A DNA stretch of 64,000 nt from Pecten maximus (taxonomy: Eukaryota). Shown here piece by piece: positions 58,701 to 63,556 of this stretch. The DNA is taken from NCBI RefSeq assembly GCF_902652985.1, contig NC_047021.1, positions 28,644,001 to 28,708,000 on the forward strand, written 5' to 3'. The position numbers and the translations under genes are program-made. Under the pieces are notes generated by a model that ran no database searches, was not told where the DNA came from, and saw nothing but the letters and a program-made list of their open reading frames with translations. The number at the start of each line of letters is the position of its first letter. Position 1 is the first letter of the stretch.

Positions 58701-61700
58701 AATTACATGTATTCTAACCAGCTGAAAATTGGACTTAGAACTGATGCAATCATCTGGTTTTTGTTTATGTAAATTACCCTGACTGGCCCGAGTTCAGTTT
58801 TTTGTTGTATTACTAGTAACTATAAAAGTATGTTTGTAAATATAAATTCATGCATGTTTGTTATCTGGAGCAGCGAGGCACACATTTATGTTTCAGTCAC
58901 AGCAAATAATCATAAACATATTAATATCACTGGAATACAAAAATAGCAATGAAATTTGTACCTTTTCTGTAGAATTCCTTCTATACATTCCTTCAGCTTA
59001 TCTTCAAAGTTTTCTTGAGCACTTGCTTCATCCACACCATCTAAATGAATAAAACATGATTAACAAATTAAGGCACATTAACAATAGAATAGAATGAGCG
59101 GACAATAAAAAAGAACATAACAAATATCAAAATAGAATGAGATGAAATGGTACCTTCTTCTGGAATACTGTTGTGTTCCTCTGACTGGACACTGACTGTA
59201 CTGACATTATCAGCAGTATCATATTCCTCATCACTTGGTGGCTGGGACACTCTTCCCTTCCCTCCTAAAACATCACAGTAAGAAATTAAAGATAGTAAGC
59301 AATGGCTGGGACTCTTCCCTTCCCTCCTAAAACATTACAGTAAGAAATTAAAGATAGTAAGAAATGGCTGGGACACTCTTCCCTTCCCTCCTAAAACATT
59401 ACAGTAATAAAAATAGTAAGAAATGGCTGGGACACTCTTCCCTTCCCTCCTAAAACATCACAGTAAGAAATTAAAGATAGTAAGCAATGGCTGGGACTCT
59501 TCCCTTCCCTCCTAAAACATTACAGTAAGAAATTAAAGATAGTAAGAAATGGCTGGGACACTCTTCCCTTCCCTCCTAAAACATTACAGTAATAAAAATA
59601 GTAAGAAATGGCTGGGACACTCTTCCCTTCCCTCCTAAAACATTACAGTAAGAAATTAAAGATAGTAAGCAATGGCTGGGACACTTCCCTTCCTTCCTAA
59701 AACATTACAGTAATAAAAATAGTAAGAAATGGCTGGGACACTCTTCCCTTCCCTCCTGAAACATCACAGTGTGAAAAATAGCCTTTCTCAGTGTTTGTTG
59801 ATCAGACGTCAACTGAACTAATACATAAATAAAAAAAATTAACAAAGTTCTCTGAATCAATTCATACATTGTGTGTAATATACTCATACATTGTGTGTAA
59901 TATACAAACTGGTTGTGGGTGCAGAAGACATCATTGTAATAGCATATTGTGTATGTGTCCTTATTAAAATTGCTTTTGTTTACATGATTATGATGAATCT
60001 GTTACATGTGTAAAGCTTACATGTTCTGGGCTAACATCAGTTTGACATTATTTTGACATAAATATACCTCAGCAAAATACCCATTTTATGCCGATTGTTC
60101 ATTGCTTTTTCAGTGATCTAGTAAGTTCCATCAGCTCTCATTCAGTTTTCTATACTAAGCAGATCCAATATATTGAGATGATTCCCTACATAAGCTTGGC
60201 AGATTGACAATGGTTTGAATGCCATGGAGTGTTTATATCTTCCATATTCTTGACTGGGAGAAATATTACTGAACATGTTCCAGCAACCAAAAAAGTAAGG
60301 ATATCAATTTAAATTATTTGACTTCAGATCTTCCCTTCATATTTTATCTCTGAATCTTATAAGTAAATGTCACTTTGACTCTAAAACTTTAGCCATCCTC
60401 TACAGTCTGCACACCCTTATGAACATTATTATTTGTCAAACAGTGCACCAGATAACTTTTTAGATCAGGGAGTGATGGGCTGCCTCTGATGAAGGACAGG
60501 GAGTAATCTAAGATACATCTGAGATTGTTGTACGCATACTTAAAATAAACAACAAAACAATCTACTTGTTTTCTATCCTTGCCTACTTTACAAAATATGA
60601 TCTGTGCGTGAGCTCCATTCAAACATTCCAGATACAGAAATGAATGGCTCAACGCTTTTGAGGTTGTTGAAAGAATATAACATGTTTACTTTTAAAAATT
60701 GTTAATAATTTTGTCTATAATACCTTTGACAGTGTTCTGGCTTTCATTGACAGATGATTTAGTTTTAAAAAATACTTTCATATACTGTCAGCAGACACTA
60801 TTTTAAGCTTCTTGCCATTCACACAGCACGCCATATGTCATTAGTGATCTGAGTCAATGGAGTGCTTAGAAGCACTCGCGGTCAGACTAGAGCAACAAAG
60901 AGCGCTTGGAAAAAGCCTTGAAGCATACATAGAGTTACGCTGGGCATTGTCAGTCGATAAAAATATCTCCCGCATCATGAACACATTACTATGCTATGTT
61001 AATTAATTGTCACATGTACAGGAGCTTTTAAGTTCTTGCATCAAAATCTTAGGCGTAATGCTACATTCATGAGAGTTTTGGGTACGTTTCCATTTTTTTC
61101 TAGTGAGTTTTTTTCTAATTACAAGGCTGTAAATTACGCTTGTACACTCCTTATCTGGAGCACCGGTCAAAGAAAGAAAAAAATATTGGTTTTATTATTT
61201 CAGTTAACATGTGCACAAACGTTTTTTTTTTAATTTTTATCATTAGATTTTTTTCTTATGCCATATAATCGTTGCTAACCTGTGCTTTTATATCAGTTAT
61301 ATCAGTCGTCGGTCTTTTTAAGCTATCAGCTTCTGGACCTCCTTGTTATTGATTCTCCACCTTCCAAATGAGCTCCTCGACTTCTTTTCTTGAAATTTTG
61401 TAGAGGAATTATCCCATTGAATATTATTAGAATATGCCTTCACGAAACGAAGTGGTCAACAACAATCTGTGCATTACCTCAGTTGACCTGGTGTTAGCTC
61501 ACCTCAATGATAGGCTAGCCTAGCTAACTCTGATAAGATTGGTTTTGGACACAGAAAAAAACCTCATTTCACTAGATCGGTCATCCCTGCGTATTCTTAT
61601 GAGTTCACCATGTGACAAATATATTCCACTTTTTGAAGATTGTTACATAATTCAATTCAAAAATTATTTTATTATTCCAAATATAGACAAATATACATGT

Positions 61701-62135
61701 TCAATATACATACAATCAATAAACCTAATTATATTAGAAATTTAAATATTATTTATGTATATTATTATCATTTGTTAAGTTTTTAAATATTTATATACAT
61801 AATCGTAGAAATGAAAGACTATATGAATGTCCTATATAAAGGCAGATCCGAGGTGAAAGTCGTTAGATCGAGTTTACATACTGTACATGTGGCCTTGGTC
61901 AAAAAGGCGGGAGTTGTCAATGACAGTAAAGTCTATCCAACCTACTGTTTGTTTGTTTAGCGTAGATCTATTCTTTATCTACGAGCAATTCAAAATCTTC
62001 AACATACTGGGAAGATAGAGATGGTGACGTATCTACATATAGGCCTAGTTATCATGCGTGAATGTAAAAAGTTCACGTGTTGTTATGACACATATGGTCG
62101 TGAATCGTCTTACCTTTCTTCTTTCCTTTCGGCAT
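46700..62135 (-). CDS. IFRD1: Interferon-related developmental regulator (IFRD1/IFRD2 family), whole gene span; 12 exons, 424 aa
   Basis: MPKGKKKGGKGRVSQPPSDEE...LRITAGETIALMYELAR...LATDSQKYRAKKERRQQRSSFRDIL...YNAAVFKARTKVRSKHRDKR; all introns GT-AG, phases sum to 1275 nt. Confidence 0.95.
47040..47365 (+). mobile_element. Probable Helentron-type non-autonomous fragment
   Basis: TGACCCCTGTGACCTTGAA..AAGGTCA motif and short hairpin + CAGGTGAGCT end, resembling bivalve Helentron-associated repeats (recognition from memory). Confidence 0.4.
47433..47525 (-). CDS. IFRD1: IFRD exon 11
   Basis: DNVLVREVFGLGDPLL...KPTKWER|gtaaga. Confidence 0.93.
51018..51225 (+). mobile_element. V-domain SINE, same family as 38573-38799
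   Basis: GGCCGAGTGGTTAAG...AGTTCGAAACCTACGTGGG...GCTGTTAATAGGACGTTAAAC. Confidence 0.88.
51320..51725 (+). mobile_element. CORE-SINE-like fragments, locally duplicated
   Basis: GTTGTGTCTTTGGGCAGAACCATTTTACCC resembles the CORE domain; CTACAAGGAGACCC block occurs twice. Confidence 0.45.
52815..53040 (-). mobile_element. V-domain SINE, same family as 38573-38799
   Basis: Reverse complement of head (CTTAACCACTCGGCC), B-box, core and tail. Confidence 0.88.
53228..53356 (-). CDS. IFRD1: IFRD exon 10
   Basis: VKFGKENFVIDSWVKQNQYDALCLALTSGIYQHLQ. Confidence 0.94.
53611..53790. repeat. ~70-bp tandem repeat, ~2.5 copies
   Basis: TGTCGATATCAGACAGGATAACAGAGTAAAGATGCAAT recurring at 53612, 53682 and 53752. 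Confidence 0.9.
53860..53994 (-). CDS. IFRD1: IFRD exon 9
   Basis: LKTLATDSQKYRAKKERRQQRSSFRDILRTVE. Confidence 0.95.
54457..54565 (-). CDS. IFRD1: IFRD exon 8
   Basis: HIGKLPDLLLSKDVELRITAGETIALMYELAREEDD. Confidence 0.95.
55685..55863 (-). CDS. IFRD1: IFRD exon 7
   Basis: DVMKTMDALEGIF...LHAAALSSWSLLLSIAP. Confidence 0.94.
56091..56141 (-). CDS. IFRD1: IFRD exon 6
   Basis: CALTLGLCHFLACSDID; 51 nt. Confidence 0.9.
56630..56825 (-). CDS. IFRD1: IFRD exon 5
   Basis: KMTVSDCLVRCIKKGRGDEQALAA...AAVKGRSE|gtaagg. Confidence 0.94.
57275..57355 (-). CDS. IFRD1: IFRD exon 4
   Basis: AQGRKSCLEGLTKALSKKCISEFLLD. Confidence 0.92.
58962..59040 (-). CDS. IFRD1: IFRD exon 3
   Basis: GVDEASAQENFEDKLKECIEGILQK. 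Confidence 0.92.
59154..59264 (-). CDS. IFRD1: IFRD exon 2
   Basis: GKGRVSQPPSDEEYDTADNVSTVS...IPEE; phase 1-1. Confidence 0.88.
59239..59780 (-). repeat. 9-copy minisatellite (57-64 bp) made of the IFRD intron 1 acceptor plus the first ~26 nt of exon 2
   Basis: Minus-strand unit ..ACTGTAATGTTTTAG|GAGGGAAGGGAAGAGTGTCCCAGCCA; 64/62/59 higher-order pattern. Confidence 0.95.
62114..62135 (-). CDS. IFRD1: IFRD exon 1 coding part (MPKGKKK G)
   Basis: ATG CCG AAA GGA AAG AAG AAA G|gtaaga. Confidence 0.85.
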
Positions 62136-62263
62136 TATTCTCGATAATTTCTTCTAATTTCACAATCTAATAAATGTTTTAAACACATAGATTTTCGTAT
62201 ATGAAAATCAAAAAGATAATATGGGGTTTGAGTTTGAGAAGAAACGTTGAACTTCGACAGCAT
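62135..62263 (-). promoter_or_regulatory. 42-codon upstream ORF in the IFRD 5' leader, stop overlapping the IFRD start (TAATG)
   Basis: ACC-ATG context; MLSKFNVSSQTQTPYYLFDFHIRKSMCLKHLLDCEIRRNYRE*; human IFRD1 has a known regulatory uORF. Confidence 0.7.
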
Positions 62264-62728
62264 GGTAGGCCCTGAATGGATTCTCACATTCTGAGCTAAA
62301 AATAGAAATTGCCTCGTTTCTAACGACGGAAATAAAACTAAACTAATAAGGTATCAACTTGCAAATTTAATGTATTGTTTCATTTAAACTCATCCAATGA
62401 GATGTTTTGGTAAAATGTAACAGCAATTATGCTAGATATTCAATATATTGTATTTTTCGGAAAGTAAGGAAAACACGACATCAAAATATCTTTCAGACGC
62501 TTGTAAAGTGATATAAAACACCTTCGAATCAAACACTGAGGAACAGAGACTATTTCGGTGCTATGACGAAATGGGACGTAGAGACAACGAAATAACCACG
62601 TGACATAGGCGTATAAATAACCAAGCGCAACGTTTGTCGTCGTATTAGCGACAGAAACACGAGCAAGGAAGGAGGTCCGTGCCACGCAAGTAAGCAAACC
62701 TACTTTACATAGACGTTTTTCGAAGGTT
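62264..62728. promoter_or_regulatory. Short divergent (bidirectional) promoter region between IFRD and HEXIM
   Basis: Start codons 594 bp apart, head-to-head; CCAAT 62394-62398, TGACG 62564-62568, E-box CACGTGAC 62597-62604, TATAAATA 62612-62619; locally CpG-rich. Confidence 0.65.
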
Positions 62729-63556
62729 ATGATTAATCAATTATCCAGAAAAATGATTGGTTTTGAATCTAGTCCACAATCATCAGTTGAGAGAATGGTT
62801 GAGAGGCAGACAAGAATTGCTATGAGAAAACGAAAAACCCGAAGAGGGAAGAAGAAAAGGGAATTTGGATCGGTCGAAAAATTTCCAGTGAAGTCATGTG
62901 ATGAATCCTATCATATTGATAGTGTAGTTTCCTCTTGCCGATATTGTGCCAAAGAAACTTTAGATATTTGTAATCGGACAAACACTAAATTCTCGAAAGA
63001 AACACGTCGCAACAAGTCCCGCCAAATTCTTAGACCAAGGTATAGTCCGAAAGCGCCACACAACTCGACCCAGTTCATAATGGACGGATATCTGAAAGAT
63101 CAGAGTTTTTACGATCATTTTGATTCACCAGAGTATCCATGCGAGTCTACAAACACGTTACGCGAACTGGAGTATTCGCCCATCAGCAACAGTGATTATG
63201 GTTTGGATACGCTGTTCAGAGACTCTGAAATAATAGATTTTGGTACAGCAACAACGGACACCATGGCTTTTATGGAACAGGATTTCGAAAGTGTCATGAG
63301 AACCGCACAAATGGATGAACTTTCAAACATGTCAAAAGAAGAACTTTTAAAAAGAGTGTTGATCATGGCCGAGAGGGCTGAACATCTGGAAAAAGAACTT
63401 GAGCAATCCAGTAGTGAGAGCAGTTACTTGGGGGATGATGATTCCATGTTAGAAAACAGTGGACAGGGATATTTGTCAAAATTACATGAAGAAAATGTGA
63501 AATTAAAAAGTGAAAATCAATTGTTGAAAGAAATGCTATCAAAAGTTCAAACTTGA
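62729..63556 (+). CDS. HEXIM: HEXIM-family P-TEFb inhibitor-like protein, uninterrupted CDS, 275 aa
   Basis: Basic ARM KRKTRRGKKKR; APHNSTQFIM (cf. APYNTTQFLM); FMEQDFESV..ELSNMSKEELL (cf. FLQRDFSETY..SLQNMSKQELI) followed by coiled coils. Confidence 0.82.
   Translation: MINQLSRKMIGFESSPQSSVERMVERQTRIAMRKRKTRRGKKKREFGSVEKFPVKSCDESYHIDSVVSSCRYCAKETLDICNRTNTKFSKETRRNKSRQILRPRYSPKAPHNSTQFIMDGYLKDQSFYDHFDSPEYPCESTNTLRELEYSPISNSDYGLDTLFRDSEIIDFGTATTDTMAFMEQDFESVMRTAQMDELSNMSKEELLKRVLIMAERAEHLEKELEQSSSESSYLGDDDSMLENSGQGYLSKLHEENVKLKSENQLLKEMLSKVQT

What the first reader, a model, noticed from the sequence alone, without database searches (positions are those of the whole stretch)
62133..62289. IFRD leader carries a 42-codon uORF whose stop overlaps the IFRD start codon (TAATG), preceded by an ATG-TGA start-stop
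Seen: on the minus strand, ACC-ATG at 62263 opens 42 uninterrupted codons (MLSKFNVSSQTQTPYYLFDFHIRKSMCLKHLLDCEIRRNYRE) in very AT-rich DNA. Its TAA (62137-62135) shares its last A with the IFRD ATG (62135-62133). A minimal ATG-TGA lies at 62289-62284. The uORF is below the ORF-track cutoff. Known: human IFRD1 mRNA is controlled by a uORF under eIF2-alpha stress, IFRD proteins bind inactive ribosomes, and UAAUG overlaps mediate termination-reinitiation in some viruses. Inference: a stress-gated, possibly peptide-dependent or translationally coupled switch on a ribosome-hibernation factor.
Basis: partly seen in the sequence, partly recalled or inferred. Interest (0 to 1): 0.82.

Follow-up and report, generated by a model that had tools for sequence, protein, structure and literature searches.

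The report
Upstream ORF abutting scallop-like IFRD start
Just upstream of a real IFRD gene there is a 42-codon reading frame whose stop overlaps the gene's start codon, an arrangement that would dampen IFRD translation much as a known uORF does in human IFRD1, but no RNA data could be reached to show that it lies in the mature mRNA, and its peptide is not conserved.

Summary
On the minus strand, ACC-ATG at 62263 opens 42 codons. Its TAA (62137-62135) shares an A with the IFRD ATG (62135-62133), and ATG-TGA lies at 62289-62284. The IFRD start is genuine: exon 1 encodes MPKGKKK, ends in a GTAAG donor and joins exon 2 in frame. Solemya velum IFRD has the same N-terminus, and Pfam IFRD exons follow downstream.

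Shuffles put the length and the overlap together at 0.1-0.4%, but the looser event, a uORF of 30 or more codons ending at or near the start, occurs in 9-13%. The stretch is single copy, unstructured and matches no Rfam family.

One unidentified invertebrate orthologue has the same HEXIM/IFRD head-to-head pair and a 31-codon uORF ending 35 nt before the ATG. It has no TAATG and no peptide similarity. The human IFRD1 uORF peptide is also unlike it.

There is no TURBS motif, so virus-type coupling is unsupported.

Both RNA-evidence routes were closed, so the TSS and any leader splicing are unknown.

The most likely reading is an ordinary repressive uORF, analogous to human IFRD1's. Stress gating is inferred by analogy only. 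Interest is modest.

The parts
62135..62263 (-). 42-codon uORF (ATG 62263-62261, TAA 62137-62135). The stop overlaps the IFRD ATG by one base (TAATG).
   Evidence: single copy in the genome; no Pfam family above threshold; no relatives
62284..62289 (-). ATG-TGA start-stop, in a different frame from the uORF. Its TGA lies 20 nt upstream of the uORF ATG.
   Evidence: chance level, since 2 of 8 upstream ATGs are followed directly by a stop
62114..62135 (-). Coding part of IFRD exon 1 (MPKGKKK plus the first base of the next codon). GT donor at 62113-62112.
   Evidence: same N-terminus in Solemya velum IFRD P0004; M1 P2 K3 invariant in alignment A2
59154..59264 (-). IFRD exon 2 (acidic N-terminal region), in frame with exon 1. 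It is preceded by tandem copies of its own acceptor region.
   Evidence: read from the sequence; matches the N-terminus of P0004
56633..56836 (-). IFRD exon that matches Pfam PF05004 positions 67-135. Further IFRD exons lie at 55866-55669, 54585-54457 and 53979-53860, and IFRD_C at 46792-46721.
   Evidence: genome coordinates minus 28644000
62264..62728 (.). Rest of the HEXIM/IFRD intergenic stretch, holding the presumed bidirectional promoter. GC and CpG peak at about 62550-62700. TATAAATA lies on the + strand at 62612-62619. Five further minus-strand ATGs lie at 62710, 62606, 62481, 62393 and 62383.
   Evidence: the promoter and TSS positions are inference only
62729..63556 (+). Divergent HEXIM-like ORF, 275 aa.
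   Evidence: PF15313, E 1.2e-13; the same head-to-head partner is present in orthologous locus L016

Best explanation
The 42-codon frame is most likely part of the IFRD 5' leader and acts as an ordinary repressive upstream ORF.

Scanning ribosomes meet its AUG first, in a good context (A at -3, C at +4). They translate 42 codons and terminate on the UAA that overlaps the IFRD AUG. After so long a uORF most of them do not reinitiate. IFRD synthesis would then depend on two minorities: ribosomes that leak past the uAUG, and possibly ribosomes that first use the AUG-UGA start-stop 20 nt upstream, resume scanning and pass the uAUG before they are recharged with initiator tRNA.

This is the same logic as the single uORF of human IFRD1, which represses about eightfold and makes translation resistant to eIF2 phosphorylation.

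Shown here: the sequence features, the identity of the gene and its start, and a mid-length uORF near the start in one other invertebrate IFRD.

Inferred: that the uORF lies in the mature mRNA, that it is translated, and that it gates IFRD under stress.
For: - Features exact as described. The IFRD start is authentic.
- Length plus stop-start overlap occurs in 0.1-0.4% of shuffles.
- The stretch is single copy, not a repeat.
- The GC/CpG peak at 62550-62700 and a + strand TATAAATA that fits HEXIM place the likely IFRD TSS upstream of 62263.
- L016, a true IFRD orthologue with the same HEXIM partner, has a 31-codon uORF with the same A(-3)/C(+4) context, ending 35 nt before the ATG.
- Human IFRD1 has a 53-codon uORF ending 43 nt before the main ORF; mutating its AUG raises expression eightfold and abolishes stress resistance (PMC4383229).
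Against: - No RNA evidence of any kind: the TSS, a leader intron or an internal acceptor could exclude or break the uORF (tools unavailable).
- Acceptor-like TTTCTATTTTTAG/CTCAG lies at 62305-62288 (AG dinucleotides at 62294-62293 and 62289-62288), and a GTGAGA donor-like site at 62287-62282.
- In L016 a well-formed 82-nt candidate intron would remove that species' uATG.
- A uORF of 30 or more codons ending near the start is a 9-13% event per locus, so two species is weak support, and the event was defined after the fact.
- No peptide conservation.
- If the leader is unspliced it holds three to five further uATGs, depending on where the TSS lies, so this uORF would be one of several.
Confidence: 0.45

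Rival explanations
1. Chance ORF. The frame is an accident of AT-rich leader or promoter DNA. It may be scanned and even translated, but it is not maintained by selection and carries no stress-specific role.
For: - 6-11% of all ATGs in the window open 42 or more codons.
- The looser architecture is seen at 13% of all ATGs taken as pseudo-starts.
- The peptide has no relatives and no family.
- GC of 27% is typical of non-coding DNA here.
- No structure signal (z 0.00).
Against: - The exact stop-start overlap combined with this length is rare in shuffles (0.1-0.4%).
- The same gene in human is known to be uORF-controlled.
- One other invertebrate shows a similar uORF.
Confidence: 0.28
2. Not in the mature mRNA. 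Either the IFRD TSS lies downstream of 62263, or a leader intron removes or splits the frame. The ORF is then promoter or intron DNA.
For: - TSS unknown.
- Acceptor-like and donor-like motifs lie around 62282-62305, and TTTATTAG is inside the uORF.
- The L016 orthologue has a convincing candidate leader intron across its uATG.
- AT-rich TATA-like strings are scattered through 62300-62520.
Against: - The only GC/CpG-rich promoter-like block lies 290-440 nt upstream of the uATG.
- The strongest acceptor-like site (62305-62288) lies upstream of the uATG and would keep the uORF in the mRNA.
Confidence: 0.24
3. Termination-reinitiation coupling. Ribosomes that finish the uORF at UAAUG reinitiate directly on the IFRD AUG, as in calicivirus or influenza B BM2-type systems.
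For: The UAAUG overlap itself.
Against: - No UGGGA (TURBS motif 1) anywhere in the uORF or 5' of it in the 196 nt shown.
- No stable structure (z 0.00).
- At 42 codons the uORF is long for cellular reinitiation (established knowledge of reinitiation after uORFs).
- The orthologue L016 lacks the overlap.
Confidence: 0.03

Closest known systems
Human IFRD1 5' leader uORF (Zhao et al. 2010; Andreev et al. 2015, PMC4383229)
   Same: Orthologous gene. A single mid-length uORF (53 versus 42 codons) lies close to the main start. The uAUG has A at -3 and a non-G at +4. The expected effect is repression of the main ORF.
   Different: [quoted passage not shown] The human uORF starts 19 nt from the cap and is the only uAUG, whereas here the cap site is unknown and up to seven other upstream ATGs lie in the intergenic stretch. 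The peptides are unrelated by eye. Translation and function have not been shown here.
ATF4-type leader: a short permissive uORF or start-stop followed by an inhibitory uORF that overlaps the main ORF
   Same: An AUG-UGA start-stop is followed by a longer uORF that reaches the main AUG.
   Different: The spacer between the two is only 20 nt, compared with roughly 90 nt in ATF4 by my recollection. The overlap with the main ORF is a single base. There is no evidence that either element is used.
Viral UAAUG termination-reinitiation (calicivirus VP2, influenza B BM2) with TURBS
   Same: UAAUG stop-start overlap.
   Different: No TURBS motif 1 and no structured element upstream. This is a cellular leader with a non-conserved upstream peptide.

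Membership tests
uORF-controlled IFRD leader (human IFRD1 type) | The downstream ORF is IFRD and the ATG is its authentic start | tested here: met
   Pfam IFRD and IFRD_C exons. Exon 1 to exon 2 join is in frame. N-terminus shared with Solemya velum IFRD.
uORF-controlled IFRD leader (human IFRD1 type) | The uORF lies within the mature 5' leader (TSS upstream, not spliced out) | not testable with these tools
There is only indirect promoter reading.
uORF-controlled IFRD leader (human IFRD1 type) | The uORF is retained in orthologous leaders | tested here: inconclusive
   One orthologue (L016) has a 31-codon uORF from -131 to -35. Chance is about 10% per locus. No close relatives could be fetched.
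uORF-controlled IFRD leader (human IFRD1 type) | The uAUG is translated, and its mutation derepresses the main ORF and alters the eIF2 response | not testable with these tools
   Needs ribosome profiling and reporters.
Conserved-peptide uORF / IFRD1-uORF microprotein | Peptide sequence is conserved among orthologues | tested here: not met
   No BLASTP alignment to the L016 uORF peptide. No similarity by eye to the human peptide printed. Exact look-up and word search were blank, though a blank is weak because uORFs are rarely called as genes.
TURBS-dependent termination-reinitiation | Stop-start overlap (UAAUG or AUGA type) | tested here: met
TURBS-dependent termination-reinitiation | 18S-complementary motif 1 (UGGGA) in a structured element 40-90 nt upstream of the junction | tested here: not met
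   No UGGGA in the 196-nt RNA. Folding z-score 0.00.
ATF4/GCN4-type delayed reinitiation | A short upstream uORF, an inhibitory uORF that overlaps the main start, and enough spacing for ternary-complex reacquisition | tested here: inconclusive
   The start-stop and the overlapping uORF are both present. The spacer is only 20 nt. Usage is unknown.

The most novel reading that the evidence does not exclude
uORF gating of IFRD, a factor that plugs the mRNA channel of idle ribosomes, is ancient across Bilateria. It is maintained by position and length rather than by peptide sequence. In this bivalve it has taken an ATF4-like form: a start-stop followed by a uORF that ends on the main AUG. That would link the integrated stress response to ribosome silencing outside vertebrates.
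Probability: 0.2. Interest if true: 0.55.

Novelty: new member of a known kind. Interest (0 to 1): 0.33.

Why it matters
IFRD proteins occupy the mRNA channel of inactive ribosomes, and human IFRD1 is one of the few mRNAs that keep being translated when eIF2 is phosphorylated, because of its uORF. A mollusc IFRD with an equivalent uORF would mean that the link between stress and production of a ribosome-silencing factor predates vertebrates. It would also give a second, differently built leader, one with a stop-start overlap, for testing models of single-uORF stress resistance. As it stands this is a plausible candidate for an already known kind of control, with no expression evidence.

Tried and rejected
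- **Orthologous loci through proteins.** The Solemya locus and the Logan transcript contigs of P0052 and P0065, which would carry 5' UTRs, could not be read.
- **Metagenome pattern scan for the MPKGKKK|GT exon.** Of 16 loci, only L010, L016 and L022 are IFRD. L007 also shows TAATG before MPKGKKK, but it is a 115-codon ORF abutting a repetitive KGKT frame, with no sign of IFRD. I rejected it as an orthologue. L014 and L021 could not be confirmed as IFRD.
- **Peptide relatives.** The exact look-up, the word search and Pfam (only a sub-threshold DUF3674 hit at E 0.046, which I treat as noise) were all blank.
- **RNA structure and Rfam.** Nothing found.
- **Repeat or transposon origin.** Rejected, because the stretch is single copy.
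- **Identity of the L016 organism.** Not resolved. Its closest proteins are unnamed ENA fragments.
- **Spliced model.** The exons were searched and translated one by one, by reference. The joined spliced protein was not built or searched.

Full report
**Observation.**
On the minus strand the sequence reads ...GGGCCTACC ATG CTG TCG ... CGA GAA TAA TG CCG AAA GGA AAG AAG AAA G|gtaag.
- The ATG at 62263 opens 42 sense codons and ends with the TAA at 62137-62135.
- The last A of that TAA is the first base of the ATG at 62135-62133.
- ATG-TGA lies at 62289-62284 in another frame.

**The downstream gene.**
Pfam IFRD (PF05004) matches four minus-strand exons at window 56836-56633, 55866-55669, 54585-54457 and 53979-53860. 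IFRD_C (PF04836) matches 46792-46721. The window is G000:C7:28644001-28708000, and this is the only IFRD locus found in the 918-Mb genome.
- The 22-nt coding part of exon 1 (MPKGKKK plus G) ends at a GTAAG donor.
- It joins the exon that starts at 59264 in phase 1 and continues GGKGRVSQPPSDEEYDTADNVSTVS.
- The best full-length representative found with one exon as query is Solemya velum IFRD (P0004, KAL5014849.1). It starts MPKGKKKAGRK...DEDYDTADNLSTVS.
- M1, P2 and K3 are invariant in a five-species alignment.

The ATG at 62135 is therefore the authentic IFRD start. The exons were handled one at a time, by reference. The joined protein model was neither built nor searched.

**Surroundings.**
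A 275-aa HEXIM-like ORF (PF15313, E 1.2e-13) starts at 62729 on the + strand, 594 nt from the IFRD ATG.
- The only block between the two genes that is rich in GC and CpG lies at about 62550-62700.
- It holds a + strand TATAAATA at 62612-62619, which fits HEXIM, plus a CACGTG and CGTCA half-sites.
- By inference only, the IFRD TSS then lies somewhere around 62450-62610.
- That puts the uORF inside the primary transcript, together with three further short uORFs (13, 8 and 9 codons) and the start-stop.
- Motifs that look like splice sites exist: TTTCTATTTTTAG/CTCAG at 62305-62288, GTGAGA at 62287-62282, and TTTATTAG inside the uORF. I could not tell whether any of them is used.

**Chance.**
- In dinucleotide shuffles of 160 to 460 nt of leader, an ATG-ORF of 42 or more codons appears in 5-28%. 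A uORF stop that overlaps the main ATG appears in about 5%. Both together appear in 0.1-0.4%.
- Across the window, 6-11% of all ATGs open 42 or more codons.
- A looser and biologically fairer event is a uORF of 30 or more codons that ends within 50 nt of the start or overlaps it. It occurs in 9% of shuffles and at 13% of all ATGs taken as pseudo-starts.
- The start-stop is at chance level.
- The stretch is single copy, has no folding signal (z 0.00) and matches no Rfam family.

**Transcript evidence.**
This is the main gap in the report.

**Conservation.**
A pattern scan for the first exon in metagenome contigs gave 16 loci. Three of them (L010, L016, L022) belong to one unidentified invertebrate.
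- Its downstream exons are IFRD, about 50% identical to the window's exon.
- L016 carries 2.9 kb of upstream DNA with a HEXIM-like ORF on the opposite strand. The head-to-head pair is therefore conserved and the locus is orthologous.
- Its leader has a 31-codon uORF. The AUG is at -131, in the context GACAAUGC (A at -3, C at +4, as in the window). The stop lies 35 nt before the IFRD AUG.
- It has no TAATG.
- A well-formed 82-nt candidate intron (GAG|GTGACC ... TTTTCTGTAG|A) would remove that uAUG if it were used.
- The two uORF peptides show no alignment.
- The human IFRD1 uORF peptide, printed in a supplement of PMC10032668, also looks unrelated by eye.
- The exact look-up and the word search with the peptide were blank. 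This is weak evidence, because uORFs are rarely called as genes.

**What is known.**
- Changing its AUG to AUA raises reporter output eightfold and abolishes resistance to eIF2 inhibition.
- Its uAUG has A at -3 and U at +4 (PMC4383229).
- IFRD1 fills the mRNA channel of inactive Drosophila testis ribosomes, and IFRD2 is found in idle rabbit reticulocyte ribosomes (PMC12056609).

**Mechanism.**
If the frame is in the mRNA, physics does most of the work.
- A uAUG with A at -3 will capture many scanning ribosomes.
- They will terminate on top of the IFRD AUG.
- After 42 codons, reinitiation is expected to be poor (established knowledge).
- IFRD output would then rest on leaky scanning. It might also rest on ribosomes that used the AUG-UGA start-stop 20 nt upstream and passed the uAUG before they were recharged.

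This matches the human IFRD1 logic in outline. Stress gating is an inference by analogy only.

Virus-type termination-reinitiation is not supported. There is no UGGGA motif and no upstream structure, and the orthologue lacks the overlap. A peptide-dependent mechanism has no support.

**Verdict.**
The sequence features are real, and the length plus overlap combination is moderately unusual. The best reading is a candidate repressive uORF on IFRD, a new member of a known kind. I put the odds at about 0.45 for that reading, 0.28 for a chance ORF that selection does not maintain, 0.24 for exclusion from the mature mRNA, and 0.03 for coupling. Interest is modest until a TSS map or a comparison of bivalve leaders is available.

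Noticed in passing
L016:1178-2227 (- strand) and L016:2882-2903 (+); window 62729-63556 and 62135-62114: The head-to-head HEXIM/IFRD gene pair is conserved. It occurs in the window (ATGs 594 nt apart) and in an unidentified invertebrate metagenome contig (JAAUXW010073981.1, roughly 650-760 nt apart depending on which HEXIM ATG is used). The two IFRDs are only about 50% identical. This suggests an old shared bidirectional promoter.
   Followed up: partly
window 59264-59800 (- strand): The acceptor region of IFRD exon 2 (..ctgtaatgttttag|GAGGGAAGGGAAGAGTGTCCCAGCCA..) is repeated in tandem about nine times upstream of the productive copy. Only the last copy continues into the acidic coding sequence. 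An earlier first-reader note, s1-793054, covers the same feature.
   Followed up: no
window 62612-62619 (+ strand): A perfect TATAAATA lies about 110 nt upstream of the HEXIM-like ATG, inside the only GC/CpG-rich block of the intergenic region. It is flanked by CACGTG and CGTCA motifs.
   Followed up: no
L007:4563-4965: A metagenome contig (SDBT01073736.1) carries a 115-codon ORF that ends in TAATG, overlapping an MPKGKKKGKTKGKTKGKT frame built from GGTAAGACAAAA repeats. It looks like the window's junction by pattern, but there is no evidence that it is IFRD. The contig ends 32 nt after the matched 24-nt pattern.
   Followed up: partly
L023:9-338: A 381-nt, very low-coverage contig in a Pseudophaeobacter profundi assembly (NZ_JARJEF010000106.1) encodes an intron-free IFRD C-terminal segment, 57% identical to query A2 (first sequence Solemya P0004) over its residues 317-426. 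It is almost certainly eukaryotic contamination of a bacterial assembly.
   Followed up: no
window 61650-61800: An extremely AT-rich stretch (12-15% GC) lies in IFRD intron 1.
   Followed up: no
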